This document shows, one piece after another, positions 9,604 through 33,753 of a DNA stretch of 64,000 nucleotides. How positions within the stretch are numbered: position 1 is the stretch's first letter; the number at the start of each line of letters is the position of its first letter. The position numbers and the translations under genes are program-made. Location: positions 62,001-126,000 of IMG/VR virus record IMGVR_UViG_3300023296_000874; one strand, given 5' to 3'. The notes beneath the pieces are model-generated. The model did not search any database. It saw only the letters and a list, made by a program, of their open reading frames with translations, and was not told the DNA's origin.

Positions 9604-9664
9604 GTACTGTCCTCCGAGTGGTGCTCAGAGTCCAGTAACGGTCGAAAACGGTCCAAGTAGGCAA

Positions 9665-9994
9665 TCAGACCCGCTTCGTCACCTTGACTACTGCTTGGTA
9701 GAGGTCCGGCAGGCTCTCTTTGCCGCCCTTGGACTCTACGTTGTCCCAGTGAATGAGTGCCACAACCTGCGCGGTGTGGTCTCCATCAGCCATCCGCCTG
9801 GCAAGCTGTCCACCATCTCGAGCAGCGCCCTTCCGATCCGCGTCGGGAGAGGTGTACTCGTACTTGCCGGAGTCGGTCAAGCCTCGTGGTCGTCGGTCAG
9901 CGGCCCGGAGGATGTCCTTCCAGTTCGGATGGGGGAGGTCAGCCAGCAGTTCAGCGTGCTTCAAGGTGTCAATTCGGATGACGTGGTCTTGCAT
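9665..9994 (-). CDS. hypothetical protein
   Basis: Translationally coupled to rmlA (TGATG overlap). Confidence 0.6.
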   Translation of the reverse strand: MQDHVIRIDTLKHAELLADLPHPNWKDILRAADRRPRGLTDSGKYEYTSPDADRKGAARDGGQLARRMADGDHTAQVVALIHWDNVESKGGKESLPDLYQAVVKVTKRV

Positions 9995-10719
9995 CAGATC
10001 TCCCTCAGGGTGTCACGGATGTACGCGCCAGCTCTGAACAGTGATTCAAACGTTCCAGCGTCCGTCCACCACCCGTCACATACCCTGAAGCTGAGCTCGC
10101 CGCTTCGGAGGTAGTAGAGATGGAGGTCGGTCACTTCGAGCTCGCCCCGTTCGGAGGGCTCAAGTCGGTCAATCACGTCCCACACACGCCGGTCAAAGCA
10201 GTAGAGGCCCGTGATTGCGAGTGGGGAGATGTACTCTTTCGGCTTCTCGATGATGTGGGTCACCTTGGGGCCGCGCACCACAGCTACGCCGAAGCGGTGA
10301 GGGTCGTCCACCTCTTTGAGGAGGATGCGCCCACCACTGTCGAAGGAGCGGATGAAGTCCTCGGTCACACCAGGCTCGAACACGTTGTCGCCCAAGATGA
10401 CACACACGTCATCCCCGTCAACGAAGTCCTTGGCGTAATGCAGAGCAGCGGGGATACCGCCAGCTCCATCCTGGTAGGTGTAGTGGATGTTCACCTCGGG
10501 GCCGAAGGTCTTCTTCCCGTTGCCCAAGAGCTGAAGGAAGTCACCTGCCCAGTTGCCCCCGGTCACGATCATGATCTCTGTCACCCCTGCGCCCACGAGT
10601 GTCGCGATTGGGTAGTGAATCATGGGCTTGTCGTAGATCGGAAGCAGGTGCTTGTTGGTGACGGCGGTCAGCGGTAGTAGTCGCGAGCCGTACCCGCCTG
10701 CCAAGATGACTCCTTTCAT
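9994..10719 (-). CDS. rmlA: Glucose-1-phosphate thymidylyltransferase (RmlA/SpsI short form)
   Basis: MKGVILAGGYGSRLLPLT..TNKHLLPIYDKPMI, LGDN, IIEKP, SERGELEVTD, WTDAGT. Confidence 0.9.
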   Translation of the reverse strand: MKGVILAGGYGSRLLPLTAVTNKHLLPIYDKPMIHYPIATLVGAGVTEIMIVTGGNWAGDFLQLLGNGKKTFGPEVNIHYTYQDGAGGIPAALHYAKDFVDGDDVCVILGDNVFEPGVTEDFIRSFDSGGRILLKEVDDPHRFGVAVVRGPKVTHIIEKPKEYISPLAITGLYCFDRRVWDVIDRLEPSERGELEVTDLHLYYLRSGELSFRVCDGWWTDAGTFESLFRAGAYIRDTLREI

Positions 10720-12275: not shown

Positions 12276-12685
12276 GCGACAAGACCGCCGCCCGCACCCT
12301 ACGTGAGTTCCTCCTGGCCGGGCAGACTGGACAGGACGATACTCGTGAGCTGCTCCCCTACTCAGGTGTGAACGGACCCAAGGTTCGGACCCTCCCAGAG
12401 GCCATCGCACACTCCAAGACCACGTCAGAGGACAGTGAGGAGTGGTTCAAGGCGAACACCCCGTACCACGGGCGTGATGTGATCGAGCACTTCGACGAGC
12501 TTGTGGGGCAGTTCACCGGGGCAGAGGTACGACCTCGTCCCGGTAGGGACGTTGACCTCATCTCAGGGAAGAGCGGACTCCAAACAAAGGGCTACAGCGA
12601 GGACCACTACACCGCTGTGCCTCAGACCTTCGAGGAGCTTTGCCTCGCGGCAATGGACCAAGAAGGCAAGACACCAAGGGAGTAG
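12272..12685 (+). CDS. hypothetical protein
   Basis: ATGA overlap with the upstream stop; begins MSDKTAART. Confidence 0.6.
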   Translation: MSDKTAARTLREFLLAGQTGQDDTRELLPYSGVNGPKVRTLPEAIAHSKTTSEDSEEWFKANTPYHGRDVIEHFDELVGQFTGAEVRPRPGRDVDLISGKSGLQTKGYSEDHYTAVPQTFEELCLAAMDQEGKTPRE

Positions 12686-12686
12686 C

Positions 12687-13499
12687 GTGAAGCTTTCAAC
12701 TGAAATCGCAGGACTCACCCGTCGCGCGAACGTCGAGAGTGTGACCAAGCACATCCAGACGTGGGGTGACAACGAACTTCGTCACCCGACCCGGTGGCAG
12801 AACGTCATCTACCTCTGCTATGAGCTCGCCAAGAGCACTCAGACCATCGCGGTTGGCGGACCTACATGGGACGGGCCGATGCGAGAGTGGGTCTACGTCA
12901 TGCCTGATGGCATTGGTGTAGAGATGAAGGGCCTTGTGTTCAATCTTGAGCCTGAGGCCTGGTACTACGAGGTTGGGATGGCACCCTGGCCCGACGCCCG
13001 GTCGCTTGAGTTCATCGGCCACAGAGACCACTGGACCCGTGTGTGGTACTGGGTGCTTGCGACGTTGGCTGTCCACGCCGCGAACGGAAAGCCCTATGCC
13101 GGTGTGGAGCGAGTAGTCAAAGGCCGACTCGCGGGCGTGACGTACTTGCAGGGCATGGTTGACCGCATCCTCCCCAAAGCTATTGAGGCGTACCGCAAGG
13201 TTCGCGGCTTTGACCCCAGCCTTGGTGAGTTGAGCGTGTCCTTTTCGGAGATCGTTCCGCCCGATGGGAAGATCGCCGTCTACCAACGGTTCGACTGCAA
13301 AGCCAAGCAGTGCGAGGGTGCCATCAGCATTCACCCGAAGGCTCTACGTGACGAGGGTGGTGAACAGTATCTCGAAACGGTACTCACCCATGAACTTGTC
13401 CACTATCTACTCAACTCGACCAACGCGGCTGACGCCCACGGAGGAGAATTCCAAGCAGTTTCAACACTGCTCGGAATCCCCCGTGAATTCCAGGACTAA
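12687..13499 (+). CDS. SprT-like zinc metalloprotease domain protein with shared leader
   Basis: C-terminal ISIHP...LETVLTHELVH....HGGEF (SprT HExxH...HG..F). GTG start at 12687 after GGGAG gives the leader STEIAGLTRRA. Confidence 0.7.
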   Translation: MKLSTEIAGLTRRANVESVTKHIQTWGDNELRHPTRWQNVIYLCYELAKSTQTIAVGGPTWDGPMREWVYVMPDGIGVEMKGLVFNLEPEAWYYEVGMAPWPDARSLEFIGHRDHWTRVWYWVLATLAVHAANGKPYAGVERVVKGRLAGVTYLQGMVDRILPKAIEAYRKVRGFDPSLGELSVSFSEIVPPDGKIAVYQRFDCKAKQCEGAISIHPKALRDEGGEQYLETVLTHELVHYLLNSTNAADAHGGEFQAVSTLLGIPREFQD

Positions 13500-15666: not shown

Positions 15667-15683
15667 CTACAAACGGATTATGT
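15667..15683 (-). promoter_or_regulatory. Class B (putative late) promoter motif
   Basis: Minus strand ACATAATCCGTTTGTAG, overlapping the topA stop. Confidence 0.7.
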
Positions 15684-17963
15684 CGCAGGCGTCTCGGGAA
15701 GAGGGTTGTAGTCCCCTATGGCGTTGCACACGAAGTCGCAGTGCTCGCTCCACTTCTTGCAAGCGTAGAAGGCCTTCTTCTTTTTCTTGCTGTACCGCTC
15801 CACCACGAAGTCTTCACACTTCGGGCAGATGCCACATGGAACCGGGTGCGTACCACGGCAGCCTTCGCCAGTACACTTCAGGTACTCGCCGTAGCGTCCC
15901 GTCGTCTTGACCATCGGATCTTCACACTTGTCACACACGATGCCTGGATAGATCTCGTCAGGCACAACCTCGACGTTCGGGTCAACCCATGAGGCCTTCC
16001 CCTTGCACTTCGTCTCCTTGTACTTGGTGCATCCCCACCAGTTGCCCCACTTACCCGCCTTGAGCTCCATTGGAGCCTCGCACTTCGGGCACTCAGGGAT
16101 CTCAACTCCCTCGCCAACCTCAGGAGGTGGCTCAGGGACGTGGATCTGAGGGAGGCCGTTGGCGTCACGGAGCAGAACTCCGGCGTCATCAGTCAGGCAG
16201 GTAGTCTTGCAGTCCGGGTACTGGTCGCATGTGTACCAGAAGCTTTCACCACCGGTCTCAGGCTTCTTGAGGATGTACCCGACGCCGCACGCTGGGCACT
16301 TGTCCTCAGTGCGGAAGAGGAACTTGGCGTCACCCTCGCGGGCTCCCTTGAGGTCCGCCTTGAAGGGTGTGTACCACTCCTCGAGCACGCTGACGTAGGT
16401 GGCGCTTCCGGCAGCCACTTCATCGAGCTTGTCTTCCATCTCAGCGGTGAAGGTGGGGTCAACCAGCTTCGGGAAGAAGGTCACCATGTAGTCGAACACC
16501 ATCTTGCCGAGGTCTGTCGCCTGGAAAGAGCGTCCGGCCTTGACGGCGAACTTGCGGGTCAGGAGCGTCTTGAGGGTGGACGCGTAGGTAGCGGGTCGCC
16601 CAACTCCGTCGCTCTCCATCTTCTTCACCAGCGAGGCGTCGCTGTATCGGCCCGGAGGCTGGGTGAACTTCTGCTCCAGCTCGATGTCGGTGAAGGGAAT
16701 CTCGTCGCCTTCGTTGATGTCAGGGAGGATCACGTCCGCCGTACCGGAGCCGTACACCTTCAGGAAGCCGTCGAACAGCATCTTGGAGCCGTTGAGCTTG
16801 AAGTTGACGGGCAGCTTGGTGTCGATGCTCACAAGCTCAACCCGGAGCTGCTCGAAGACGGCGTCTGCCATCTGAGATGCCCAGTAGCGGTTGCGGATGA
16901 GCTCGAACAGTCTGAACTGGTCACCGGTCAATGCGCCGGGGTCTTCACCCGTGGGGCGAATGGCCTCGTGAGCCTCCTGGCTGGCCTTCTTGTTCTTGTA
17001 CTTGTTCTCCGAGTCGGAGATGTGGTCCTTGCCTTGAGCCTTCTCAAGCTCGTCCCTCATGGCAGCCATCTTCTCCTTGTCGATGGAGGTGCTGTCTGTA
17101 CGGTGGTAGGTGATGACGCCCGCTTCGAAGATCTTCTGCGCGGTGATCATCGTCTTGTCGACGCTCCAGCCGAGCATGTTGTTCCCGGCCTGCTGAAGGG
17201 TCGCGGTGGTGAAGGGAGCGGCGGGCTTGCGCCTACGCTCTGAACGCTTCACGCTCGACACACGGAGCTTCTTGCAGCTCTCGTTCATGAGCTGCCGGAT
17301 GCCTTGAGAGGTCTTCGCCGTGCGAATGGTCTTCGCCTTGTTGTTGACGCCGTACAGCCGAGGCTTGTAGCCGTCGCACACTGCGTCAATCAGCCAGTAC
17401 TCCTCAGGGATGAAGGCTTCGATCTCCCTCTCCCTATCGACAACGTACTTGAGCGCCACGCTCTGCACACGTCCGGCTGAGGCACCGGCAATGCCCTTAC
17501 GCCACATGATAGGGCTGACACGGTAGCCGACAAGGCGGTCAATCACGCGCCTGCCCTGCTGAGCCTCGAACAGGTTGTTGTCGATCTCACCCGGATCAGC
17601 GATGGCTGCGAGTACGGCAGGCTTCGTGATGGAGTGGAACAGGACGCGGTGGACGGTCTTCCCGCGCTTGGGAAGCTTGGAGGCGATGTGTACGGCAATA
17701 GCCTCGCCTTCACGGTCGGGGTCAAGAGCGAGATAGATGATCTCGTGCTTCTTGGCCTCATCGACAATCGCCTTGATCGTACCACCTTTGCCACTGATGA
17801 CTTCGTAGGTGGGATCGTAGGTCTTGCTACGGGTGTTGACTCCGACCTTCTTGGGCGGAAGATCAATCACATGGCCCTTGGTTGCCATGATCTTGAAACT
17901 CCCGCCCAAGATGGAACTGAGCTTGCGGATTTTGTTCGGGCTTTCGATGATTACGAGCGGCAC
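15678..17963 (-). CDS. topA: DNA topoisomerase I (type IA) with C-terminal zinc ribbons
   Basis: LVIIESPNK, DPDREGEAIA, SAGRVQS, ITYHRTDS (catalytic Tyr), QEAHEAIRPT, GVGRPATYA; four C4 zinc ribbons. Confidence 0.97.
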   Translation of the reverse strand: MPLVIIESPNKIRKLSSILGGSFKIMATKGHVIDLPPKKVGVNTRSKTYDPTYEVISGKGGTIKAIVDEAKKHEIIYLALDPDREGEAIAVHIASKLPKRGKTVHRVLFHSITKPAVLAAIADPGEIDNNLFEAQQGRRVIDRLVGYRVSPIMWRKGIAGASAGRVQSVALKYVVDREREIEAFIPEEYWLIDAVCDGYKPRLYGVNNKAKTIRTAKTSQGIRQLMNESCKKLRVSSVKRSERRRKPAAPFTTATLQQAGNNMLGWSVDKTMITAQKIFEAGVITYHRTDSTSIDKEKMAAMRDELEKAQGKDHISDSENKYKNKKASQEAHEAIRPTGEDPGALTGDQFRLFELIRNRYWASQMADAVFEQLRVELVSIDTKLPVNFKLNGSKMLFDGFLKVYGSGTADVILPDINEGDEIPFTDIELEQKFTQPPGRYSDASLVKKMESDGVGRPATYASTLKTLLTRKFAVKAGRSFQATDLGKMVFDYMVTFFPKLVDPTFTAEMEDKLDEVAAGSATYVSVLEEWYTPFKADLKGAREGDAKFLFRTEDKCPACGVGYILKKPETGGESFWYTCDQYPDCKTTCLTDDAGVLLRDANGLPQIHVPEPPPEVGEGVEIPECPKCEAPMELKAGKWGNWWGCTKYKETKCKGKASWVDPNVEVVPDEIYPGIVCDKCEDPMVKTTGRYGEYLKCTGEGCRGTHPVPCGICPKCEDFVVERYSKKKKKAFYACKKWSEHCDFVCNAIGDYNPLPETPAT

Positions 17964-18025: not shown

Positions 18026-18316
18026 TCAGCGACGGCCGTTCACCTTGTCGGCCATGAGGTTCGAGCTCTTGTAGGTGACCTTCAGGTAGGGCTCGACGTA
18101 GCTCTTCTCACCCGTGCGCGGGTTGCGGGCCTGGCGGTCGCCCTTCTTGACGGAGCGGAAGGTACCGAGGCCGGTGACGGTCACAGCGCCTCCCTCTTCG
18201 TTGAGCTCACCCTGCAGGGAGCCGACGAAGCCCTTCAGGGCTTCACGCACCTGGGCGTCGTTGAGGTTGGTGGAGCCGACGATGTCAGCGACGAGGGTAT
18301 TCATGGTAAGTGCCAT
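18026..18316 (-). CDS. HU/IHF-family DNA-binding protein
   Basis: VTVTGLGTF....R.ARNPRTGE. Confidence 0.9.
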   Translation of the reverse strand: MALTMNTLVADIVGSTNLNDAQVREALKGFVGSLQGELNEEGGAVTVTGLGTFRSVKKGDRQARNPRTGEKSYVEPYLKVTYKSSNLMADKVNGRR

Positions 18317-18426: not shown

Positions 18427-19251
18427 TTAGAAAGCCACGGCGGTCACCCCATCAAGGATGAAAGCGTAGCGGAAGGTCAACCCTACCACTGCTGGGTCCC
18501 CAGGCCGCTCAGGGTCCTGGCTTTGTACGCTCGGTCCGTCCATGCAAAGCCACCCCAATCCATCCACTATAGTCACAGGACACCCTACCAGCGAGACAGT
18601 GCGAATGCCTCGATACATATCGAGACCCGTACCAAGGTTCGATAGGTCTTGCACCTCACGAACCATCAGGGCGTTGAGCAGTCCGGGGTCGCCTACGACG
18701 CGTGCTCGGTCGTGGTCGCGAATGTTCATCCAGGCCTCGTTGAAGGTGCCGGGGACGGAGATTGCGGTGAGCTGCTCGTAGTATGCCTCCTCAAGCTCCC
18801 TGTCCATCATAGAGCGCGCCAGGCTGAGTGCTCTGTCGATCGCCTCCATGCTTCGGTCACGTCGCACTTCATCGGTGATCTCTACTGGGATGGTGCGGGT
18901 GATGACCGGGGTCACTACGCGCTCACTGCTTTCGTCAGTGAGGACGCGGTGGGTGATGAACTCCTGCTCCAGAGGGGAGATGTTCCGGACCATGATGTTG
19001 GTCAGGACGGGAGACCGTGACTGTTCGGTGTTGCCCGACCACACGCTCTGGTCTTCGTGGAGGTAGTCTGCTACCTCAGCCGTGAAGCTACCGCTGGTCC
19101 CGCCGCTGAAGTCAGCCGCGTCGTCGTAGTAGGCTACGAGGTTGGACTGCCCTCGAAGCCGTGAGCTTGGCTCCGGTGGTGTTGGAGCTTTGGGTGGTTG
19201 TGGCGGTGGTTGCCACACTCCCAGCAGTAGTTCAAGCTTCGGATGTGCCAT
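18427..19251 (-). CDS. hypothetical protein
   Basis: 274-aa ORF with ACGGAG RBS; no recognised motif. Confidence 0.55.
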   Translation of the reverse strand: MAHPKLELLLGVWQPPPQPPKAPTPPEPSSRLRGQSNLVAYYDDAADFSGGTSGSFTAEVADYLHEDQSVWSGNTEQSRSPVLTNIMVRNISPLEQEFITHRVLTDESSERVVTPVITRTIPVEITDEVRRDRSMEAIDRALSLARSMMDRELEEAYYEQLTAISVPGTFNEAWMNIRDHDRARVVGDPGLLNALMVREVQDLSNLGTGLDMYRGIRTVSLVGCPVTIVDGLGWLCMDGPSVQSQDPERPGDPAVVGLTFRYAFILDGVTAVAF

Positions 19252-19330
19252 GCTCCGTCAGACAAGCGACAGCCCCCAAAGTCGTGAAACTCAAGGGGCT
19301 GCCGGGGAGGCCTCAAAGGCTTATGGAGGG

Positions 19331-20917
19331 CTATTCCACCTCGAAGCTGTCTCCCGAATCAACCGCGTGGGCAAACCGGGCGCGGACGCCGTCTCCGGTC
19401 TCCTCGTCCTTACCCACCCACTCGATGATTCCTTCGAGCTGCTCGCGCATGGTCACCAGGAGGCTGGGCTTGGCACGCACAGCGTTCACAAGGTCCTCCG
19501 TGCTGAGTCCGCGCTTCCCGTCGGAGTACGCCGTGAAGAGCGCGGAGCCAACCGCACCTTCGATCTCGGAGCCGGAGCGTGTGGGCGAGGCCTGCACGAG
19601 GGCGTCGAGGTCGAAGTCAGCCGGGTCGCGGCCCTTCGCACGGATCTGAATCTCCCAAATCTGCTTCCGCTGGGCTTCCTCGGGGAGGCCCACAAAGAAG
19701 ATCTCGTCGAAGCGCCGGAGCAGTTCGGGCGGGAGCTCCGTGATGTTGTTGGCCGTTGCCATCAGGATCACGTCGTCCTCGCACTCCTGCATCCAGTTGA
19801 GGAAGGTACCGATCACGCGGGCGGTGGTGCCGGAGTCGCTGAAGGAGCTGCTCTGCATACCCGCGAGGCCCTTCTCAATCTCGTCGATCCACACGATGCA
19901 CGGAGCCATGCTCTCCATCGTGTTGAGCGCGCGCCGCATGTTGCTCTCGCTCTGTCCAACCTGCCCGCCGAAGAGGCGTGCGGGGTCGAACTTGATGAGC
20001 GGCAGTCCGTAGCGGGAGGCGATGGCCTTGCAGATGAGGCTCTTGCCGTTGCCGGGGAGGCCAACCTGCATGACGCCCTTGAAGCGCGGCAGTCCGTAGT
20101 CCTTGGCTTCCTGGAGCCAGGAGCCGTTGCGCTCGTCGAGGTACTTCTTGAGGGCACCCATGCCGCCCACGTCCTCGAAGGTGAGGTTGGGGTTCACCAG
20201 TTCGAGCAGCGGGTTCTTCTTGATCACCTCGCGCTTGGCGAGGCGAACGTGGGCTGCGGTCAGCATCTTGAACTGAGCCAGCGAAGCGAGGGCGCACTGC
20301 TCGGCCTCGTAGTGGGTCATGCCCGCCATGGCCTCAGCCACATCCTGCGTGTTCACAGGCCCCTTCAGCCGTCGGCTGAGGTGGTCGGAGCTGAGGATGC
20401 CGTCGAGCATCGCCTTGTGGTCGGCCACCGTCGGGAGGTCGAAGTACACAACACGGAACATGCGCTCCATGCCAGCGGGGATCTGGAGGGTGTGCCCCAC
20501 GAAGATCAGGCTCTTGAAGGCCTGCCGGTTCATCTGGCACTGTTCGGCGAGGTCCTCGAGGCGGCGGCTCAGCATCGGGTCACGCCCGCTGAGGATCGTC
20601 TTCTCGGCCCCGAGCATCACCGTGTAGAGGCGTCCGTCGGGGGTCGGCTCGGTCAGGAGCCCGGCGAGGAAGGTGTTGGGGTCGCTGGTCGCGGTGTCCA
20701 GTCGGGCACCCGCCACGTTGTCCCAGAAGCCGATGTACTCGGCCAGCGTCTTGCGGCCCAGGCTCTGCTTCCAAACGCGGAAGTCGTGGCGCTTCTTGCT
20801 GGAGTACTCGGTGTGGAGCCACTTCAGGAAGCGTCCGGGCTCGTCAGTCACCACGTAGATGAAAGGAGCCAGGGTGGAAACTACCTGGCGAACTTCGGGA
20901 TTGTCTGTCTTCGGCAT
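19331..20917 (-). CDS. Ycf46-like AAA+ ATPase
   Basis: Degenerate N-terminal AAA module, then TFEDVGGM..LK, Walker A GLPGNGKS, Walker B IVWIDEIEK, ATAN....LPPELLRRFDEIFFV.LP, SGSEIE. Confidence 0.9.
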   Translation of the reverse strand: MPKTDNPEVRQVVSTLAPFIYVVTDEPGRFLKWLHTEYSSKKRHDFRVWKQSLGRKTLAEYIGFWDNVAGARLDTATSDPNTFLAGLLTEPTPDGRLYTVMLGAEKTILSGRDPMLSRRLEDLAEQCQMNRQAFKSLIFVGHTLQIPAGMERMFRVVYFDLPTVADHKAMLDGILSSDHLSRRLKGPVNTQDVAEAMAGMTHYEAEQCALASLAQFKMLTAAHVRLAKREVIKKNPLLELVNPNLTFEDVGGMGALKKYLDERNGSWLQEAKDYGLPRFKGVMQVGLPGNGKSLICKAIASRYGLPLIKFDPARLFGGQVGQSESNMRRALNTMESMAPCIVWIDEIEKGLAGMQSSSFSDSGTTARVIGTFLNWMQECEDDVILMATANNITELPPELLRRFDEIFFVGLPEEAQRKQIWEIQIRAKGRDPADFDLDALVQASPTRSGSEIEGAVGSALFTAYSDGKRGLSTEDLVNAVRAKPSLLVTMREQLEGIIEWVGKDEETGDGVRARFAHAVDSGDSFEVE

Positions 20918-20929
20918 TTTGGAGGCCCT

Positions 20930-21075
20930 CCTGTCGGGGGAGAAACCCGACGTGCCGTGTTGATTGTATGTGTTGTCTGCACTGGCCCAACCCCGTCCCG
21001 CTTGGCTTGCGCCTTGCGGGTACGGGGGAGGGGGTCCTGGTACCGGTCTCCGTCCGCCGCCCGAAGGCGGCTTCA
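20930..21075 (-). other. structured intergenic RNA element (UUCG and GCAA tetraloop hairpins)
   Basis: gccgcc-TTCG-ggcggc (21056-21071); ccccgt.cccgc-aa-ggc-GCAA-gcc-aa-gcggg.acgggg (20991-21027); gtcggg/cccgac hairpin next to the AAA RBS. Confidence 0.5.
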
Positions 21076-21085
21076 GGAGGCAGCA

Positions 21086-21427
21086 TCAGCCAACGGCAAC
21101 CTGCAGCACGATCTCGCCGCGCTCGGTCACCTCGGAGAGAACCGTGTGGCCCTGCATCGCGAGGTTGTAGCGGACGTGGCGGGCCATGGAGTTGCGGTAC
21201 CACTCGCCCACAACGTAGGCGATGTCCGAGTCCATGGAGGACGCCGAGGGGTTGTCGAGGTTCAGCTTGAGGGCGTTGCCGTAGCGGTTGAACTTCCGGT
21301 CGGAGAAGGTCAGGACGGTGTCGCCACCCTCCTTGCTCTCGCTGAACGCGATGCCGCGATCGTTGAGCTCGTCCTTGAGGGAGTCTGCGCTGCCGAAGTG
21401 GCCCTGAACGGTGATCTTGTGGCTCAT
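21086..21427 (-). CDS. DUF1257 (Ycf35)-like protein
   Basis: Begins MSH...L...L..RG, ends Y......A.QG..V.E....GEIVLQV; adjacent to a Ycf46 AAA gene. Confidence 0.6.
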   Translation of the reverse strand: MSHKITVQGHFGSADSLKDELNDRGIAFSESKEGGDTVLTFSDRKFNRYGNALKLNLDNPSASSMDSDIAYVVGEWYRNSMARHVRYNLAMQGHTVLSEVTERGEIVLQVAVG

Positions 21428-21497
21428 GGTGTTGTCCTTGCTCGAGTTAGGGGCTCTTGAAGTCCCCTTGGGTTACGCACTTGTTGTCCACTCCTCT

Positions 21498-21524
21498 AAC
21501 GCTCGTAAACGCGGAGAAGTTAGA
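21498..21524 (-). promoter_or_regulatory. Class A promoter TCTAACT-N16-CGTT
   Basis: tctaact-tctccgcgtttacgag-cgtt. Confidence 0.7.
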
Positions 21525-21536
21525 ATCGAAGTCGGA

Positions 21537-21743
21537 TCAGTTGACGCCGGGGATGCTGAGGCCGACGTTCACGGGCTGCGGGGTTCCCTGCAGCTCATCG
21601 TGGCCGGTCACCTGGCCCAACGAACGGGTGAGGGTGAGGATCTTGGCGCAGGCCTGGGTCTGCTGGGTGCCCTCGGTCTTGAGGTCGGTCGTAACCGTGC
21701 CCTTGTCGCCAATGCGGATCTCGTAGATGCTTCGCTCGCTCAT
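21537..21743 (-). CDS. DUF2997-like small protein
   Basis: 68 aa; I.I...G.V.......G....C...T..LG.V pattern; gene context. Confidence 0.55.
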   Translation of the reverse strand: MSERSIYEIRIGDKGTVTTDLKTEGTQQTQACAKILTLTRSLGQVTGHDELQGTPQPVNVGLSIPGVN

Positions 21744-21805
21744 GTCGTTGTCCTTCTGAAGTCGGTCCGGCTTGCTTGCCGGGCCAGGTTGCTTGCTTCC
21801 CCTCT

Positions 21806-21832
21806 AACGCGCTCACCTCGTGGAGAGTTAGA
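21806..21832 (-). promoter_or_regulatory. Class A promoter TCTAACT-N16-CGTT
   Basis: tctaact-ctccacgaggtgagcg-cgtt. Confidence 0.7.
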
Positions 21833-22223
21833 GAGTTTCTTTTCGCTTTCTAATTCGAACCAGAGTCTGCTCTGCTACCGGACAAGATGGTGTTGTGCTT
21901 CTCGGCGTACCGTCTGCGGATTCCTCAGGAGCTTCGTAGTCGATCGTCAACCCTTCCCCATCAGTCTGGCTTGCTTCTGCTTCAAGAGCCACTCCCTCGG
22001 CGTGGATTTGTTCCACGAGGGCAGTAGGATCGCTGACAGACACGGCGCAGACGCGGAACGAGCACTTGCCGCCCGGCTCAATGTCGAGGCCCCGGATCAC
22101 GGATGACTCAGGGAACACACCCGCGCGGCGCAGTTCATCAGCTCCAAAGCGGTCCAGTAGGAAACGGAGCAGCTCCGTCTCATCGATGGGCACGGTCAGC
22201 TCTACTTTCTGAACATCAGACAT
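21828..22223 (-). CDS. hypothetical protein
   Basis: Coupled ORF in the polA-downstream operon. Confidence 0.55.
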   Translation of the reverse strand: MSDVQKVELTVPIDETELLRFLLDRFGADELRRAGVFPESSVIRGLDIEPGGKCSFRVCAVSVSDPTALVEQIHAEGVALEAEASQTDGEGLTIDYEAPEESADGTPRSTTPSCPVAEQTLVRIRKRKETL

Positions 22224-22527
22224 CTGCGAACACCACTCTGAGTCGGGATTTGATGATGGCTTCCACTTCCCACTTGCCCAGCGTGTACATCAGGCGGGGA
22301 TCGGAACCCAGCCGGTCTTGAACGTACTGAAGCACTTCCACACGGAGGAGCTCGTACTGGTCTGTCGTCAAGACAACGTCGTGGGTCTGATACCGGATTC
22401 GAACTCCAGCACCCTTCCGGTTGCCCGGTGTGGGATGCCCTACCTCGCAGAGGTCTCTGATCAGGGGAATGACGAGGGGTGTCAGCAACGTCTCAATCTG
22501 TAGTAGGTCGAGTGTGGCTGTCATCAC
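22216..22527 (-). CDS. hypothetical protein
   Basis: Overlapping start/stop with both neighbours. Confidence 0.55.
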   Translation of the reverse strand: MMTATLDLLQIETLLTPLVIPLIRDLCEVGHPTPGNRKGAGVRIRYQTHDVVLTTDQYELLRVEVLQYVQDRLGSDPRLMYTLGKWEVEAIIKSRLRVVFADV

Positions 22528-23018
22528 TTCCTCTTCTTGCCGGGGATGCGGATGGTGGCATTCTTGCCCACCTTCGCGTCAATAGCACCCGAAAAGTCCA
22601 CACTCCATGGGTCCTGCTCAGGCGTCTCCCATTCCTTGTGCATGGTCGCAGCGGTAGGCGCTGACCAAGGGTCCTTCGGGCGCTGTGCGGCTTTCTGGGC
22701 CTTGTCGAGGTCATCAACCGCCGCGTCTACCTTTACGGAGGGCTCTACCACTGTGTCGGGGTCTGCGCGGTGTACGATCTCGTCCGGGTAGTTCGACAGC
22801 GGACTGAGTGGTTGTTCAGCCTCGGGATCTACGAACTCAAGGAGGTGCTCGTGTCGCTTGATCTTCGCCTGTGTGGCGTTGTCGGTGTAGCCCGAGCGGA
22901 AACATCGGTTGTTGACGCACCCTTGGGTACAGACGACAGCCACAAACTCGTCGATGTTGACCTTGCTTCCGGGGTTGCATTCCCCCATCAAGTCAACCTG
23001 GCCTCTTAGAGTCCCCAT
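22524..23018 (-). CDS. hypothetical protein with Cys-rich N-terminus
   Basis: C...F...C...C....C cluster; overlaps the polA stop. Confidence 0.6.
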   Translation of the reverse strand: MGTLRGQVDLMGECNPGSKVNIDEFVAVVCTQGCVNNRCFRSGYTDNATQAKIKRHEHLLEFVDPEAEQPLSPLSNYPDEIVHRADPDTVVEPSVKVDAAVDDLDKAQKAAQRPKDPWSAPTAATMHKEWETPEQDPWSVDFSGAIDAKVGKNATIRIPGKKRK

Positions 23019-25594
23019 TCAACCGCCTTGTACTGGAAGTACTGTGAGTCCACCCTGATTTCACGGGTGGCGTTCAGCACGGCTCCCGTCTCACTCTTGA
23101 GTACGAGCTTCGTGGTGCCTGAACCGGTCAGGATGAACAGAGCCTCGAGCTTCCGGAGCTTGTTCTTCGTGTACGGTCCGCACACTACGTATTCAAGCAC
23201 CTCATCACCGGATGCAACAGTGGGAACCTCCTGAACCGGCTCCGGCTCCGCTTCCGGTGCGCTTCCGGAAGCTTCCGGTGCGGGCGCTGACGTCTCCACG
23301 TTCTCTGGAGTAGGTGGAGGAGTGGAAGCTTCCGGTGCGCTTCCGGATACTTCCGGAGCAGCAGGCGTCGGTGGTGCCTCACCTGCGGGCGTCGGGTCCT
23401 GGTCAGGTCCGTTGTAGGTGCGTCCGTCAAAGTAGAGGTCTCCGGGGTGCAGGGGCTTCACACCTTCTCGCAGACACTTCAGTACGGGAGCGGGCGGCTT
23501 CCATGCGTTGTTCGCTTCGCCCCAGTTCGATCCCCACTCGATGTCCACGGTCAGCGGGATCTTCCACCCCTTCGGTCCGCAGCGGCTCATTACCAGGCCC
23601 AGCTCAGGCATGATGATGAACTTCATGCTGTCCCGCACCTCGAACACGATTTCATCGTGTACGGTGAGGAGGATGCGGCAGTCCTCGCGCCAGCCATTCC
23701 TCTCGATCAGCTTGTCGCACATCACCATCGCGATCTTCGTGATGTCTGCCGACGTACCCTGAACCACCGTGTTCACGGAGGTGCGCTCACCGAACGAGCG
23801 GAGGCGCTTGTCGTCCTCCAACATCTCGGGGATCAGCCGGATGCGCCCGAACGAGGTCTTCACCATCTGGGTCTTGGCGGCTTGCGAGTGCTGCTTCTTG
23901 ATCCACCGCTTGATGCCCGGCAGGTTGTCGAGGAAGCTCTTCTGGATGCGGTAGCCCTCATCCTCGGGGACGCCAATGTTGCGCGCCAGCGTCTTGCCAC
24001 CGGCTCCGTAGAGGATGCCGAAGTTGACGCCCTTGCTCTTGCCACGGTACGGCTCTTCAGAGGTGCCGAACACCGCCACACTGGTCTGGGAGTGAATGTC
24101 CCCTACCTTCTCGTGACAGTAGGGGCAGTGATGCCATAGCGGGCTGTTGCCGATGATCTCGTAGTCGTCGCCGTACTTCTTCTTGCACTCGTTGTGGTTG
24201 AACTCGGTCACCCATTTCGACTCACCGCTCTGGTTGCCCGCAATGCGGAGCTCAACACCAGCGAAGTCGATCGCGGCAATGACGAAGCCGTCTCGAGCAA
24301 TGAACCCCTTGCGGATATTCGGCTTGCCCTTCTTGACTTTCGGTACCGCCTGTGCGTTGACGCCCGTGTACCCCTGGTCGGAGCGTCCACCGGGAGCAGC
24401 AAACCGCCCAGTAGGAGCGCCACAAGCCATGATGCCGAAGCGGCCGTCGTTGAACTGGTCGACGTTGTTGATGAGGTTGTTGAGGTAGGTGCCGCGCAGC
24501 TTGAGGAGCTGTCGGTACTTCACCACCATCGTCAGAGCGGGATACTTGCCCTTGTACTTGGAGTCCAACTCCTCGAGCGTGCCCGCGTCTGTCTTCCACT
24601 GCGCGCCGCTGGGTGTCTTGCCCGCGTTGGGGACGCTGAGCTTGTCGAACAGGGCCTCACCGAGTGCCTTGGCACTCCCGATGTTGAGCTCGCTGTCGCC
24701 TACGAGCTTCCGGATGTCGGTCTCCATCTGCTCCGCTTCGAGCTTCAGTCCGTCATCCAAGCCCTGAAGGTAGTCAACGTCAATGCGGAACCTGTTGCGG
24801 CTCATGCGGCGCAAGACTCCAATCAACATCTTCTCGATCTTGTAGATCGTGCCCTGAGCCTTCAGGTTGAGGTTGTCCTTGTAGAGGTTCCAGAGGTGCC
24901 AGGTGCAGATGCCGTCACCGGAGGCATACACGTAGGCTTCCTCGGGGTGCAGCTCCTCGAACTGAGGGATCTTGGTCCCCTTGGGGAACAGGCTCTTGAA
25001 CTCGATCATCTGCCAACCGAGAATGTCCTTGCTCTGCGACTTGAGGCCGATCCGCTTCCTGTTGCTGTCTACCAGCCAACCCATGACCTGCGTGTCGTCG
25101 AACTTGTCGGGCTGCTCCGGTACGTTGAAGCCCTCGCCCCACATCATCTCCGTGTCGAAGGTGGCGTTGTGGTAGATGCAGATGCAGTTGTCGAGTAGAC
25201 GCTGGATCTGCTCAGCCACCGGCTTCCACGGGAGGTTTCCGTTGTCCGGGTTGGAGATGCTGTCGTGAGCGGAAACGTGCCTGACGGGCGCGTAGAAGCC
25301 GACCTCACCGTCGTAGCAGAGAGCGAACCCTACGATGTGGTGGACGGGTCTACCGCCTTCCAAGGGGTGTCCTCCGTAGACACGGGTATCCAGCCCCTGG
25401 GTCTCGAGGTCGATGACCACCGCGCCGGATGCAATAGCAGCATCCACCACTTCGGTCAGCACCGCGAGATCGTCGATCAGTACGAAGGCCTTCTCCTGCA
25501 TCCATGGCTGGATGGCCTCTTCACTGAGCCCGCCTACGGCATTACCAAAGGGGTCGAATTGGACTTCAATGCCCTTCTTCCATTCACGAGCCAT
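23006..25594 (-). CDS. polA: Family A DNA polymerase (3'-5' exonuclease + polymerase, no 5'-3' exonuclease)
   Basis: ExoI DLET, ExoII YHNATFD, ExoIII YASGD; motif A IDFAGVELRI, motif B RGKSKGVNFGILYG, motif C TVHDEI. Confidence 0.95.
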   Translation of the reverse strand: MAREWKKGIEVQFDPFGNAVGGLSEEAIQPWMQEKAFVLIDDLAVLTEVVDAAIASGAVVIDLETQGLDTRVYGGHPLEGGRPVHHIVGFALCYDGEVGFYAPVRHVSAHDSISNPDNGNLPWKPVAEQIQRLLDNCICIYHNATFDTEMMWGEGFNVPEQPDKFDDTQVMGWLVDSNRKRIGLKSQSKDILGWQMIEFKSLFPKGTKIPQFEELHPEEAYVYASGDGICTWHLWNLYKDNLNLKAQGTIYKIEKMLIGVLRRMSRNRFRIDVDYLQGLDDGLKLEAEQMETDIRKLVGDSELNIGSAKALGEALFDKLSVPNAGKTPSGAQWKTDAGTLEELDSKYKGKYPALTMVVKYRQLLKLRGTYLNNLINNVDQFNDGRFGIMACGAPTGRFAAPGGRSDQGYTGVNAQAVPKVKKGKPNIRKGFIARDGFVIAAIDFAGVELRIAGNQSGESKWVTEFNHNECKKKYGDDYEIIGNSPLWHHCPYCHEKVGDIHSQTSVAVFGTSEEPYRGKSKGVNFGILYGAGGKTLARNIGVPEDEGYRIQKSFLDNLPGIKRWIKKQHSQAAKTQMVKTSFGRIRLIPEMLEDDKRLRSFGERTSVNTVVQGTSADITKIAMVMCDKLIERNGWREDCRILLTVHDEIVFEVRDSMKFIIMPELGLVMSRCGPKGWKIPLTVDIEWGSNWGEANNAWKPPAPVLKCLREGVKPLHPGDLYFDGRTYNGPDQDPTPAGEAPPTPAAPEVSGSAPEASTPPPTPENVETSAPAPEASGSAPEAEPEPVQEVPTVASGDEVLEYVVCGPYTKNKLRKLEALFILTGSGTTKLVLKSETGAVLNATREIRVDSQYFQYKAVEWGL
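23240..23360 (-). repeat. imperfect direct repeat encoding the PolA Pro/Ala linker (APE.SGSAPEA x2)
   Basis: cttccggtgcgcttccgga occurs twice. Confidence 0.7.
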
Positions 25595-27843: not shown

Positions 27844-28106
27844 TCGTCCTTGAAGAGCAGGTCGATGCGGTTGGAGGGCTGTACTTCCTCGACACCCTTG
27901 GCGGTGTCCTCAAAGGCCACTGAGAGGGTCACGTCGTAGGTGTTGACGTTGATGAGGTCTACGTCGTCCATCCGTGCAATCTTGGCTTCCATCCGTGCTA
28001 CCGCAAGGGTGAGAGCCTGCTTGAGTGTGGTGCAACCCTCTTCAATCAGATTGCCGACGACCTCGTGGTCGATGTCGATGTGTAGCGTGATTTTACCGTG
28101 CGGCAT
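27840..28106 (-). CDS. hypothetical protein
   Basis: Coupled ORF. Confidence 0.55.
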   Translation of the reverse strand: MPHGKITLHIDIDHEVVGNLIEEGCTTLKQALTLAVARMEAKIARMDDVDLINVNTYDVTLSVAFEDTAKGVEEVQPSNRIDLLFKDD

Positions 28107-29044: not shown

Positions 29045-30520
29045 CTACTCGTTTACCAGTGAGTCCCCGATGCCGAGCTCGTCGAGGATGTTGCCATCAT
29101 CATCTTCTGAGTCCACGGGGTTCCGGATTCGGCGCGATTGGAAGTGAACTGAAGCGGTGAATGGCTTGAAGTGGTTGCCGTCTCTGTTCTTTAGACAACC
29201 AATCTTCACTTCGTTGTTATCTCGAAGTTCAGTCGTGTCCCCGAGGAAGGTGTAGGTGATCAGGCTGGCGCTACGTTCTGCCTCGTTTGCCCACGAGAGA
29301 GCGTCGAGCTTGTAGTGCCCCTGGTTCTTGCAGGCTTCCTTCCAACCGTTACGGTTGGCCTGGAAGGGAGTACACACCGGGATACCCTCGCCGTCGTTGA
29401 AGTTCAGCGCCAGCAGGCTGAGGTCCTTCATCACGTAGTTCATAGCCATGGCGAAGTTGTTCACCGAGCGGCCCGTCGAGTTCTCAATGAGTCCGGCGTG
29501 ATCTGCGATGATCAATCCGAGTTCAGCCTTGCGGTGCTCCACTTCAGCCTTCAGCTTCATTTCGGGCACGGTGATCTCGCCAGCGGGGCGCTCAACGATG
29601 ATGCGTCCGTAGTCCTGCGACATCCGGTCCTCAAAGTCAGCCGCCACGTCGCGTAGCAGAGCCTCTTCCTCTCCAGTCAGCTCACCATCACGGAGCCGTC
29701 CGTAGTCGATGTAGCGGGCGTTGCCGGAGCGTGTCCGGAACTTGTCGTGGGTGGAGTGGATGCAGTAGAGGATGCGCCGTACCTGCTCGTACTTCATCTC
29801 GAGGCTGAAGTACATGCAGTTCCATCCGTAGTGGATGGCGGTGTTGTAGGCGTAGTTGAGGGCCAGCGTGGTCTTGAGCTCTCCAACGAACCCCAGCATC
29901 AACATCAGCTCGCCAGGACGTAGTCCCTTGGTGATGTGGTCGATGTTGCTGAGGCCCATGAGCCGTCCGATCTTCGGGTTGGTCTTCTGGAGCTCGTACT
30001 CCTGAAGTACCTCGTCGCCGTCCTCAACGATGTTGCCCTTGAGCTTGCCGTTGCTCTCTACGGTGAGTAGCTCGTCGGCCCCAGCAATGAAGTGCTCAAC
30101 CGCGTCACGCACGCCCTTCTTCAAGGGGCCGCGTTTCTCGAACCTCATGCCGCTGCTCTTGATGACGGCGGTCTCACGGAGCAGGCTGTCGAGCTTGCGC
30201 TGCTTCTGCTCTGCGTAGAGCGTCTTGCACAACCGTCTGAAGTTGGAGCGGATGTAGCCTGAGCCCTCCCGAATCTCCGCAAGACGCTCCGACACATCGG
30301 GTCTCCCCTCAGCCTCGAAGTAGTCAATCACGGATTGGTTGGAGGGCAGCTCGCTCTCACGGCTCTCGCCGAAAAAGTCTTGCACGTACCGGTAGATGTC
30401 TTCGTCCTGCTCCCGTAGGAACTCGATCCCGCTCTCAACGAACTGAAAGTAGTTCGAACGCAGGTTCTCTTGGGACGTACCATCGGCATAGTCAATGAGG
30501 GAGTGGAGGATGCGCTTCAT
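29045..30520 (-). CDS. Replicative DnaB-like (SF4) helicase
   Basis: GLRPGEL, Walker A GFVGELKTT, YFSLEM, IIADH, QANR, KNRDG. Confidence 0.9.
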   Translation of the reverse strand: MKRILHSLIDYADGTSQENLRSNYFQFVESGIEFLREQDEDIYRYVQDFFGESRESELPSNQSVIDYFEAEGRPDVSERLAEIREGSGYIRSNFRRLCKTLYAEQKQRKLDSLLRETAVIKSSGMRFEKRGPLKKGVRDAVEHFIAGADELLTVESNGKLKGNIVEDGDEVLQEYELQKTNPKIGRLMGLSNIDHITKGLRPGELMLMLGFVGELKTTLALNYAYNTAIHYGWNCMYFSLEMKYEQVRRILYCIHSTHDKFRTRSGNARYIDYGRLRDGELTGEEEALLRDVAADFEDRMSQDYGRIIVERPAGEITVPEMKLKAEVEHRKAELGLIIADHAGLIENSTGRSVNNFAMAMNYVMKDLSLLALNFNDGEGIPVCTPFQANRNGWKEACKNQGHYKLDALSWANEAERSASLITYTFLGDTTELRDNNEVKIGCLKNRDGNHFKPFTASVHFQSRRIRNPVDSEDDDGNILDELGIGDSLVNE

Positions 30521-33703: not shown

Positions 33704-33753
33704 ATGGTACTCCGTGTTGTATATCCAACGGAGTACCATTGAGAAAACTCAGA
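33703..33753 (-). promoter_or_regulatory. Class A promoter TCTGAGT-N16-CGTT (33727-33753) with 13-bp RBS-sequestering hairpin
   Basis: tctgagt-tttctcaatggtactc-cgtt; perfect inverted repeat aatggtactccgt/acggagtaccatt. Confidence 0.7.

What the first reader, a model, noticed from the sequence alone, without database searches (positions are those of the whole stretch)
19331..21832. DUF2997 - DUF1257 - Ycf46 AAA+ triad with dedicated promoters
Three genes resemble a conserved but functionally uncharacterised module known from cyanobacteria, plastids (ycf35/ycf46) and mobile elements. Both small genes have their own near-identical class A promoter, implying high early expression. Inference: two adaptors plus an unfoldase, or a polymer remodelled by the AAA, used in host takeover.
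Basis: partly seen in the sequence, partly recalled or inferred. Interest (0 to 1): 0.6.

Follow-up and report, generated by a model that had tools for sequence, protein, structure and literature searches.

The report
Phage Ycf46-type ATPase with two partners
A giant phage from a salt lake carries, inside its DNA-replication genes, a very diverged copy of a widespread but unexplained three-gene set: a Ycf46-type AAA+ ATPase and two small proteins that are predicted to pair with each other.

Summary
The three genes are real and lie on the minus strand: AAA+ 19331-20917, p113 21086-21427 and p68 21537-21743.

- **AAA+:** it is 40% identical over 372 residues to cyanobacterial proteins named Ycf46.
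- **Small proteins:** neither matches any family library, even at E<=10. Profile-profile comparison links p113 to DUF1257 (94% probability, full length, shared N-terminal MSH). It links p68 to DUF2997 more weakly (53%, E 1e-4, conserved Cys aligned).
- **Module:** relatives of this ATPase in 80 bacterial and archaeal genomes sit beside Pfam-verified DUF1257 and DUF2997 genes. One Clostridia genome fuses the two small domains. A complex prediction supports p68-p113 binding (0.70 against 0.00 for controls).
- **Conservation:** all five sequenced relatives and two gene tables keep p68-p113-AAA+ after DNA polymerase I and before topoisomerase I.
- **"Promoter":** it is a real 32-nt element (TCTAACTYY-N14-CGTTAGAGG), found five times in 257 kb, twice here. 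It does not resemble a sigma-70 promoter, and no RNA data exist.

The family assignments are supported. Promoter function, early expression and host takeover are unproven. The mechanism is inferred: an ATP-driven remodeller working with a small heterodimer.

The parts
19331..20917 (-). Ycf46-type classical AAA+ ATPase, 528 aa. It has an N-terminal domain of about 240 aa and one AAA module at residues 285-410, followed by a lid.
   Evidence: PF00004 E 9e-25 and phrog_8638 E 3.6e-97. 40% identity over 372 aa, E 3e-82, to P0035, which NCBI and UniRef name 'stress-responsive protein Ycf46'. The nearest solved relatives are Cdc48/p97 D2 domains. Walker A is GLPGNGKS, Walker B is WIDEIEK, sensor-1 is N and the Arg pair is LLRRFDE. 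Pore loop 1 reads GQVG, with no aromatic residue.
20990..21085 (-). Structured spacer between p113 and the AAA+ gene, with two strong stem-loops. Possibly an attenuator or an mRNA-end hairpin.
   Evidence: Minimum free energy -53.4 kcal/mol, z -3.6, with 0 of 200 shuffles folding as well. Hairpins of unrelated sequence occupy the same spacer in five relatives (z -1.8 to -3.0). It has no U-tract and the simple terminator scan does not call it.
21086..21427 (-). p113, a remote DUF1257 (Ycf35-like) homologue with an invariant N-terminal Met-Ser-His.
   Evidence: No library hit at E<=10. The family of 25 (A7) against a DUF1257 reference (A5, 12 of 15 members verified by Pfam) gives probability 94.3%, E 1e-7, 106 columns. 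Cross-control 0.3%. The AF2 model has pLDDT 84.8. The best ESM Atlas match is a DUF1257 cluster, TM 0.63/0.59 over 108 residues.
21428..21492 (-). Conserved leader of p113: a CAAGTGCG box (21476-21483) followed by a GGGG...CCCC hairpin and the ribosome-binding site.
   Evidence: Nearly invariant in the 78%-identical relative L043. The same box plus a hairpin precedes the AAA+ gene in L051 and L052.
21493..21524 (-). Copy 1 of the 32-nt element TCTAACTTC-N14-CGTTAGAGG, 65 nt upstream of the p113 ATG.
   Evidence: Conserved in L043 and L044.
21537..21743 (-). p68, a probable DUF2997 homologue and the predicted binding partner of p113.
   Evidence: No library hit. The family (A6) against a DUF2997 reference (A8) gives probability 53.5%, E 1.3e-4, 43 columns, with the Cys aligned. 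Control 0.3%. The intermediate 65-aa ORF of L008 scores 81% to A6, 30% to A8 and Pfam DUF2997 E 0.21. Predicted complex with p113: ipSAE 0.70 against 0.00 for controls.
21801..21832 (-). Copy 2 of the 32-nt element, TCTAACTCT-N14-CGTTAGAGG, 57 nt upstream of the p68 ATG. It overlaps the stop codon of the upstream gene.
   Evidence: Partly conserved in L043, and a TCTAAC box is present before the p68 genes of L050 and L051.
21828..23018 (-). Three unannotated genes (131, 103 and 164 aa) lying between DNA polymerase I and p68; in three relatives (L050, L051, L052) and one gene table, genes of like size fill these slots, while the others have shorter ones.
   Evidence: Synteny. No Pfam or PHROG hit. 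It is unknown whether they belong to the module.

Best explanation
This is a jumbo-phage version of the Ycf46-type AAA+ module. It comprises one classical AAA+ ATPase and two small partner proteins that are very diverged members of DUF1257 (p113) and DUF2997 (p68).

The two small proteins most likely form a heterodimer by strand pairing, between the C-terminal strand of p113 and the N-terminal hairpin of p68. That heterodimer would work with the ATPase as its adaptor, regulator or client, and the ATPase would use ATP to remodel a protein or nucleoprotein assembly.

In this phage clade the module is a fixed part of the DNA-replication gene block, so its target is more likely a replication or DNA-metabolism complex than a host-takeover target. 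The small genes have their own conserved upstream elements, and a structured spacer separates them from the ATPase gene. This would let them be made in excess of the ATPase.

- **Shown here:** gene reality, family relationships and conservation of the module.
- **Predicted only:** the p68-p113 heterodimer.
- **Inferred:** contact with the ATPase, the target and the expression pattern.
For: **ATPase**
- PF00004 and phrog_8638 matches.
- 40% identity, E 3e-82, to a named Ycf46.
- Catalytic motifs intact.

**The module elsewhere**
- 80 genome loci hold relatives of the ATPase.
- The neighbouring small ORFs are Pfam DUF2997 in 5 of 5 tested and DUF1257 in 2 of 5 tested. 12 of 15 reference members are Pfam DUF1257.
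- DUF2997 lies within 4 kb in 47 of 80 loci, and DUF1257 in 27 of 80 with a strict model.
- Phages SM1, L338C, RcMenchie and JP1 also carry both families.
- In cyanobacteria the gene after Ycf46 is annotated DUF1257.

**p113**
- hhalign 94.3%, E 1e-7.
- Shared N-terminal MSH.
- Best Atlas fold match is a DUF1257 cluster.

**p68**
- hhalign 53.5%, E 1.3e-4.
- An intermediate sequence in L008.

**Pairing of the two small proteins**
- A natural DUF1257-DUF2997 fusion, P0089, lies directly after an AAA+ gene.
- Predicted complex ipSAE 0.70 against a best control of 0.00. In calibration the mark was reached by 58 of 80 solved complexes and 2 of 110 mismatched pairs. The runs share at least 71% of their contacts and the partner's pLDDT is at least 63.

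**Position and literature**
- Synteny PolA ... p68-p113-AAA+ ... TopoI (HU in five of seven) in seven relatives' gene tables, five of them with DNA.
- The surrounding genes are a replication module.
- One relative has an intein inside the AAA+ gene.
- ycf35 and ycf46 are each lost mainly from freshwater red-algal plastids (PMC5940233).
- A DUF2997-ycf35-fed7 cluster exists in cyanobacteria (PMC4284462).
Against: - Neither small protein reaches any curated family threshold.
- The DUF2997 link is only moderate (53%).
- No solved structure resembles p113: Foldseek finds nothing at E<=0.001 and the best VIA Z is 5.2. The fold therefore gives no hint of function.
- Binding to the ATPase was not tested.
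- The pore-loop aromatic residue typical of threading unfoldases is Gln here and Met in cyanobacterial Ycf46.
- Relatives of the ATPase elsewhere pair with quite different neighbours, namely an SF1 helicase, DUF3150 and an unnamed 250-310 aa family. The small proteins are therefore not obligatory partners of the family.
- There are no expression data.
- The complex prediction used my own shallow alignments, so its calibration holds only roughly.
Confidence: 0.6

Rival explanations
1. The small heterodimer, or a polymer of it, is the client of the ATPase rather than its adaptor. The ATPase would engage the invariant free N-terminus (Met-Ser-His) of the DUF1257 protein and disassemble or recycle an abundant p68-p113 assembly, as Vps4 does with ESCRT-III.
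For: M1-S2-H3 is invariant in all 25 p113 family members, and MSH is the consensus of bona fide DUF1257. The small genes have their own upstream elements, and hairpins separate them from the ATPase gene, which is compatible with excess production. The N-terminus lies outside the predicted p68 interface.
Against: The pore loop lacks the aromatic residue used to grip substrates. No evidence of polymerisation was obtained. Expression was not measured. The conserved N-terminus could equally be a metal-binding or catalytic site.
Confidence: 0.2
2. The module is an early host-takeover or anti-defence device driven by dedicated strong early promoters.
For: The repeated 32-nt element before both small genes is real and conserved. 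The AAA domain resembles the IetA defence ATPases at domain level.
Against: The element has only five strong copies in 257 kb, so it is not a general promoter class. It does not resemble a sigma-70 promoter. Four of the five relatives have a short p68-p113 spacer without the element. The genes are fixed inside the replication block between DNA polymerase I and topoisomerase I. The IetA match covers only the generic AAA domain and no IetS-like protease is nearby. Cellular genomes carry the same module, so it is not specific to phages.
Confidence: 0.1
3. The two small ORFs are unrelated lineage-specific phage proteins, and their resemblance to DUF1257 and DUF2997 is chance. Only the ATPase belongs to a known family.
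For: There are no hits in Pfam, PHROGs, NCBIfam or PADLOC, even at E<=10. The DUF2997 probability is only 53%. ESM Atlas feature scores are below 0.9.
Against: Independent lines agree. These are the full-length hhalign match at 94% with 0.3% cross-controls, the shared MSH terminus, the top structural match to a DUF1257 cluster, matching sizes and adjacency to an orthologous ATPase as in 47 of 80 cellular loci, a predicted interface that places the C-terminus of p113 next to the N-terminus of p68 as in the natural fusion, and weak direct HMM hits of the p113 model that fall only on ORFs adjacent to AAA+ genes.
Confidence: 0.07

Closest known systems
Cyanobacterial and plastid Ycf46 (AAA+) with Ycf35 (DUF1257) and the DUF2997 protein
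   Same: The ATPase family is the same: 40% identity over 372 aa to a protein named Ycf46. The small-protein families are the same at profile level. In cyanobacterial loci L119, L120 and L132 the gene after Ycf46 is DUF1257. Cyanobacteria also have a DUF2997-ycf35-fed7 cluster (PMC4284462). Function is unknown in both cases. Published work links Ycf46 to stress response, KaiC interaction and carbon concentration (PMC13683863).
   Different: Here the small proteins fall below every curated threshold. The gene order is reversed (DUF2997-like, DUF1257-like, then AAA+). The setting is a phage replication module, not a cellular stress operon, and no ferredoxin is nearby. The first ~130 residues of the ATPase do not align with the cyanobacterial protein.
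AAA+ / DUF1257 / DUF2997 cassettes of diverse bacteria, archaea and other phages (e.g. loci L083, L055, L062; Pseudomonas phage SM1 genes SM1_026, 029 and 030)
   Same: The ATPase is 34-43% identical. A DUF1257-sized and a DUF2997-sized gene lie on the same strand next to it.
   Different: The usual order is AAA+, DUF1257, DUF2997, often with an extra gene between them. Those small proteins pass Pfam thresholds. The window's clade forms its own subfamilies, with no direct HMM cross-hits at E<=1e-3.
Classical AAA unfoldases with adaptors (Cdc48/p97, FtsH, PAN, Vps4)
   Same: The AAA module, Walker motifs, sensor-1 and arginine fingers match. The best solved relatives are p97/Cdc48 D2 domains, E 4e-42.
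   Different: There is a single AAA module preceded by a family-specific N-domain. Pore loop 1 reads GQVG instead of aromatic-hydrophobic-Gly, and two residues are deleted between the arginines. There is no protease domain or protease partner.
Iet anti-phage system (IetA AAA+ with IetS protease)
   Same: There is a domain-level match of the AAA module to the IetA models, E 5.8e-23.
   Different: The match covers only residues 272-485 and scores below NCBIfam's cut-off (71.8 against 510 bits). No protease partner is present, and the small proteins have no PADLOC match.

Membership tests
DUF1257 / Ycf35 (PF06868), for p113 | Match to the Pfam model above its gathering score | tested here: not met
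   There is no hit even at E<=10 by hmmscan, nor by a six-frame search of the whole phage genome. None of four homologues hits either. p113 is therefore filed as a remote homologue, not as a Pfam member.
DUF1257 / Ycf35 (PF06868), for p113 | Full-length profile-profile similarity to verified members | tested here: met
   A7 against A5 gives probability 94.3%, E 1e-7, 106 of 113 columns. A5 is 12 of 15 Pfam-positive. The cross-control against DUF2997 is 0.3%. A local repeat gave 95%.
DUF1257 / Ycf35 (PF06868), for p113 | Conserved extreme N-terminus Met-Ser-His | tested here: met
   M1, S2 and H3 are invariant in A7. MSHF is the consensus of A5, with S2 invariant.
DUF1257 / Ycf35 (PF06868), for p113 | Same fold as predicted DUF1257 structures | tested here: inconclusive
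   The best Atlas row is a DUF1257 cluster, TM 0.63/0.59, 108 residues, rmsd 3.6. Both sides are predictions, and no solved structure exists for comparison.
DUF2997 (PF11211), for p68 | Match to the Pfam model above its gathering score | tested here: not met
   No hit at E<=10. The syntenic 65-aa ORF of L008 reaches only E 0.21.
DUF2997 (PF11211), for p68 | Profile-profile similarity over the 47-residue domain, including the invariant Cys | tested here: inconclusive
   A6 against A8 gives probability 53.5%, E 1.3e-4, 43 columns, and C32 of p68 aligns with the invariant Cys. The invariant Gly three residues before that Cys is not kept. Control 0.3%. The intermediate L008 ORF scores 81% to A6 and 30% to A8.
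DUF2997 (PF11211), for p68 | Encoded next to a DUF1257 gene and physically paired with it | tested here: met
   The genes are adjacent in the window and in all relatives. The predicted complex scores 0.70 against 0.00 for controls. A natural fusion of the two domains exists. Binding is predicted, not measured.
Ycf46-type AAA+ ATPase | Single classical AAA module in the C-terminal half with intact Walker A, Walker B, sensor-1 and Arg fingers | tested here: met
   PF00004 at residues 285-410. Motifs read from alignment A4.
Ycf46-type AAA+ ATPase | Closest named relatives are Ycf46, with similarity reaching beyond the generic AAA core | tested here: met
   E 3e-82 and 40% identity over residues 135-500 to P0035, named Ycf46. 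Residues 1-500 align with other family members. Generic AAA families score far lower.
Substrate-threading AAA unfoldase (working analogy) | Aromatic-hydrophobic-Gly pore loop 1 | tested here: not met
   The window and its two closest relatives read GQVG. Other phage relatives read KFVG, SLVG or ALVG, and cyanobacterial Ycf46 reads SMVG.
Sigma-70-type promoter (for the two upstream elements) | -35 and -10 hexamers with 16-18 nt spacing | tested here: not met
   0 sites in 19200-22400. The element is a 32-nt bipartite, partly palindromic motif. Its hairpin energy does not stand out from shuffles. Promoter activity itself cannot be tested with these tools.
Iet defence system | IetA ATPase together with an IetS protease partner | tested here: not met
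   Only an AAA-domain match to IetA was found. No protease is among the neighbouring ORFs.

The most novel reading that the evidence does not exclude
The Ycf46-type ATPase with its DUF1257-DUF2997 heterodimer is a remodeller of RecA-fold hexameric ATPases. In cyanobacteria it is reported to interact with KaiC. In this phage clade, where it is locked into the replication block a few genes from a DnaB-like helicase that also matches the KaiC-type ATPase family, it would load, unload or recycle the replicative helicase. That would give the orphan plastid genes ycf35 and ycf46 a first concrete biochemical role.
Probability: 0.1. Interest if true: 0.75.

Novelty: new member of a known kind. Interest (0 to 1): 0.45.

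Why it matters
ycf35 (DUF1257), ycf46 and DUF2997 are old "conserved hypothetical" genes of cyanobacteria and algal plastids with no known biochemistry.

This locus and the comparison it prompted show three things:
- The three families travel together across bacteria, archaea and phages.
- The two small proteins are predicted to form a heterodimer and are sometimes fused into one chain.
- A clade of giant phages keeps a highly diverged copy inside its replication genes.

That turns a vague association into testable proposals: pull-downs, ATPase stimulation, and knock-outs in tractable phages such as Pseudomonas phage SM1 or in Synechocystis. It also shows that the current Pfam models miss whole phage subfamilies of both small proteins.

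The locus itself is a member of an existing, uncharacterised module. It is not a new kind of system.

Tried and rejected
**Searches for the small proteins that found nothing**
- Direct family scans (Pfam, PHROGs, NCBIfam, PADLOC).
- Six-frame searches of the phage genome with PF06868 and PF11211.
- tblastn of p113 against 50,697 phage records and megablast of the locus.
- The word-indexed protein search returned only p113 itself. The full phmmer scan of 1.84 billion representatives returned four true homologues plus one spurious repeat protein, P0008.

**Structure**
- Single-sequence AF2 of p113 was too poor to use (pLDDT 53.6). It was replaced by a 25-sequence model.
- Foldseek against PDB and BFVD gave nothing at E<=0.001.
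- VIA-align against 48,161 chains gave a best Z of 5.2 (KA1/TBP-like alpha+beta domains), within the noise range. No fold-based function is claimed.

**The 32-nt element**
- An RNA hairpin or terminator reading was rejected. Fold energies are ordinary (z -1.0 and -1.6), and the left arm is not kept in L043.
- A sigma-70 promoter reading was rejected.
- A 9-mer count of the intergenic regions was uninformative because of G+C bias.

**Other**
- The downstream 274-aa gene (18427-19251) was considered as a fourth component and rejected. It has no homologue among the downstream genes of other loci, and its slot is variable or empty in relatives.
- Expression could not be tested. All 24 runs that hold the sequence are salt-lake DNA metagenomes kept as contigs.
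Full report
**What is there.** The window is bases 62001-126000 of a 257,533-base virus record (IMG/VR, estimated 81% complete), that is, a jumbo phage. Runs that hold the sequence are all salt-lake DNA metagenomes.

Three minus-strand ORFs match the finding's coordinates: a 528-aa AAA+ protein (19331-20917), a 113-aa protein (p113, 21086-21427) and a 68-aa protein (p68, 21537-21743). The 772-aa plus-strand ORF across the same region is an antisense artefact of the 61% G+C content.

The surrounding minus-strand genes form a replication module:
- PhoH/PIN at 33749-35035
- SNF2 helicase at 31422-33155
- DnaB-like helicase at 29045-30520
- DNA polymerase I at 23006-25594
- three unannotated genes
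- p68, p113 and the AAA+
- a 274-aa gene
- HU at 18026-18316
- topoisomerase I at 15678-17963

.

**The ATPase.** It has one classical AAA module (PF00004, residues 285-410) and matches phrog_8638 over its full length. The nearest solved relatives are Cdc48/p97 D2 domains.

A scan of 185,579 species genomes with an alignment of phage relatives kept 80 loci with 33-43% identity, spread across bacteria and archaea and including cyanobacteria. The cyanobacterial protein at L119 belongs to a cluster that NCBI and UniRef name "stress-responsive protein Ycf46". The window protein is 40% identical to such a member over 372 residues (E 3e-82).

Walker A, Walker B, sensor-1 and the arginine pair are intact. 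However, pore loop 1 reads GQVG rather than aromatic-hydrophobic-Gly, and two residues are missing between the arginines. "Unfoldase" is an analogy that one hallmark does not support.

**The small proteins.**
- *Library searches.* Neither protein matches Pfam, PHROGs, NCBIfam or PADLOC, even at E<=10. PF06868 and PF11211 find nothing in the whole phage genome. ESM Atlas look-ups gave only weak leads to DUF1257 and DUF2997.
- *Homologues.* A full phmmer scan found four homologues of p113. A profile search raised this to 25 family members (alignment A7).
- *Reference sets.* In the 80 cellular loci, the ORFs next to the ATPase gene turned out to be Pfam-verified DUF2997 (5 of 5 tested) and DUF1257 (2 of 5 tested, the other three being diverged). 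From these I built reference alignments A5 (DUF1257, 12 of 15 members Pfam-positive) and A8 (DUF2997).
- *p113.* The p113 family matches DUF1257 at 94.3% probability, E 1e-7, over 106 of 113 columns. Both families start with an invariant Met-Ser-His. A 25-sequence AF2 model (pLDDT 84.8) has a DUF1257 cluster as its best Atlas match (TM 0.63/0.59).
- *p68.* The p68 family (A6, seven members taken from relatives) matches DUF2997 at 53.5% probability, E 1.3e-4, over 43 columns, with the invariant Cys aligned.
- *Controls and intermediates.* Cross-controls score 0.3%. The small ORFs of the viral locus L008, which has the best-scoring ATPase relative among the viral contigs scanned, act as intermediates.
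- *Conclusion.* I regard p113 as a secure remote DUF1257 homologue. p68 is a probable DUF2997 homologue.

**The module.** With strict models, DUF2997 lies within 4 kb of the ATPase gene in 47 of 80 cellular loci and DUF1257 in 27 of 80. An iterated model finds more DUF1257-position genes. Phages SM1, L338C, RcMenchie and JP1 carry both families a few genes downstream of their ATPase.

In one Clostridia genome the two small domains are fused into a single 184-aa protein directly after the ATPase gene. Residues 1-119 match DUF1257 at 98.8% and residues 124-175 match DUF2997 at 97.8%.

A complex prediction of p113 with p68 scored ipSAE 0.70, against 0.00 for the best of three controls. In the tool's calibration that mark was reached by 58 of 80 solved complexes and 2 of 110 mismatched pairs. 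The runs share at least 71% of their contacts and the partner's pLDDT is at least 63. My own alignments were used, so these counts hold only roughly. The interface pairs the last strand of p113 (residues 105-111) with the first strand of p68 (residues 5-11), which is the geometry the natural fusion implies.

Published context agrees with a functional link:
- Cyanobacteria have a DUF2997-ycf35-fed7 gene cluster (PMC4284462).
- ycf35 and ycf46 are each lost mainly from freshwater red-algal plastids (PMC5940233).
- Ycf46 is described as stress-induced and KaiC-interacting in Synechococcus (PMC13683863).

I found no paper that describes the triad in phages.

**Conservation in the phage clade.** All seven relatives whose gene tables could be read (five of them with DNA) keep the order polymerase I, three small genes, p68 (63-76 aa), p113 (108-113 aa), AAA+ (527-559 aa), a variable slot, HU (in five of the seven) and topoisomerase I. 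The contigs reach 478 kb. One relative has an intein inside the AAA module. The 274-aa gene downstream in the window is not conserved.

**Cis elements.**
Only five strong copies exist in the 257-kb genome; weaker matches are at background level. So it is real and rare, not a broad promoter class.
- *What it is not.* It does not resemble a sigma-70 promoter. As RNA it folds no better than shuffled sequence.
- *Conservation.* It is conserved in 78-97%-identical relatives. A TCTAAC box precedes p68 in two more distant relatives. The p68-p113 spacer in four of the five more distant relatives is short and lacks the element (L133 has a TTAG-rich stretch there). A separate p113 element is therefore specific to the window's lineage.
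- *Other elements.* A CAAGTGCG box plus hairpin precedes p113 here and precedes the AAA+ gene in two relatives. Every genome has strong hairpins of unrelated sequence in the spacer between p113 and the AAA+ gene (z -1.8 to -3.6).
- *Reading.* Together these suggest that the small genes are expressed separately from the ATPase, and perhaps more strongly. No RNA data exist to test this.

**Mechanism.** The most likely picture is an ATP-driven remodeller (Ycf46-type hexamer) that works with a p68-p113 heterodimer. In this clade it probably acts on a replication or DNA-metabolism complex.

Whether the heterodimer is an adaptor, a regulator or a client is open. The invariant free MSH terminus and the possible excess expression favour a client or engagement role. 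The non-aromatic pore loop argues against classical threading. Host takeover is not supported by the position of the genes.

**Verdict.** The expression and takeover inferences are unproven. The locus is a diverged new member of a known but uncharacterised module. Its main value is that it sharpens testable hypotheses for ycf35, ycf46 and DUF2997.

Noticed in passing
L051:5428-8256 (relative of the window's AAA+ gene): The AAA+ gene of one relative is 942 aa long and carries an intein (Intein_splicing, LAGLIDADG) between two halves of the AAA domain.
   Followed up: no
L073:5200-5754 (Clostridia MAG): A natural single-chain fusion of DUF1257 (residues 1-119) and DUF2997 (residues 124-175) lies directly after a Ycf46-like AAA+ gene and overlaps its stop codon by 4 nt.
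   Followed up: yes
Loci L082, L084, L090, L104, L108, L128, L131; L015, L024-L026, L035; L010-L014, L016-L018, L022, L029, L030, L033, L034: Relatives of the same ATPase have other downstream neighbours instead of, or besides, the small proteins. Seven genomes have a related 600-1150-aa protein there, shown to be an SF1 helicase (AAA_11/AAA_12) in the one tested, five viral contigs have one ~300-aa family, DUF3150 in the member tested (L024), and 13 viral contigs have an unnamed 250-310-aa family.
   Followed up: partly
window 21476-21483 (minus strand); L051:5387; L052:4229: A CAAGTGCG box followed by a GC-rich hairpin lies 20-60 nt before the start codon of p113 in the window, and before the AAA+ gene in two relatives. 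It may be a shared regulatory site.
   Followed up: partly
Genome positions 27917-27948, 36998-37029 and 170520-170553 (outside the window): These are the other three strong copies of the 32-nt TCTAAC...GTTAGAGG element. One lies 3 nt before an ORF that starts MGQLTAIIGDVHG, which looks like a metallophosphatase motif. One is a palindromic copy in what looks like an intergenic stretch; I did not check the flanking genes.
   Followed up: partly
window 18427-19251 (minus strand): This 274-aa gene between the AAA+ and HU genes has only a sub-threshold Phage_capsid_4 match (E 0.0027). The slot holds unrelated genes or none in relatives.
   Followed up: partly
window 29045-30520 (minus strand): The DnaB-like replicative helicase also matches the KaiC-type ATPase family PF06745 (E 7e-7). 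This is of note because cyanobacterial Ycf46 is reported to interact with KaiC.
   Followed up: no
window 19142-21460 (plus strand): A 772-aa open frame lies antisense to the AAA+ and p113 genes. It has no support and is typical of high-G+C DNA.
   Followed up: yes
window 7791-10719 and 12501-13499: Other genes in the window include an LPG_synthase_C-like protein, a PLP-dependent enzyme, a nucleotidyl transferase and a SprT-like protein.
   Followed up: no
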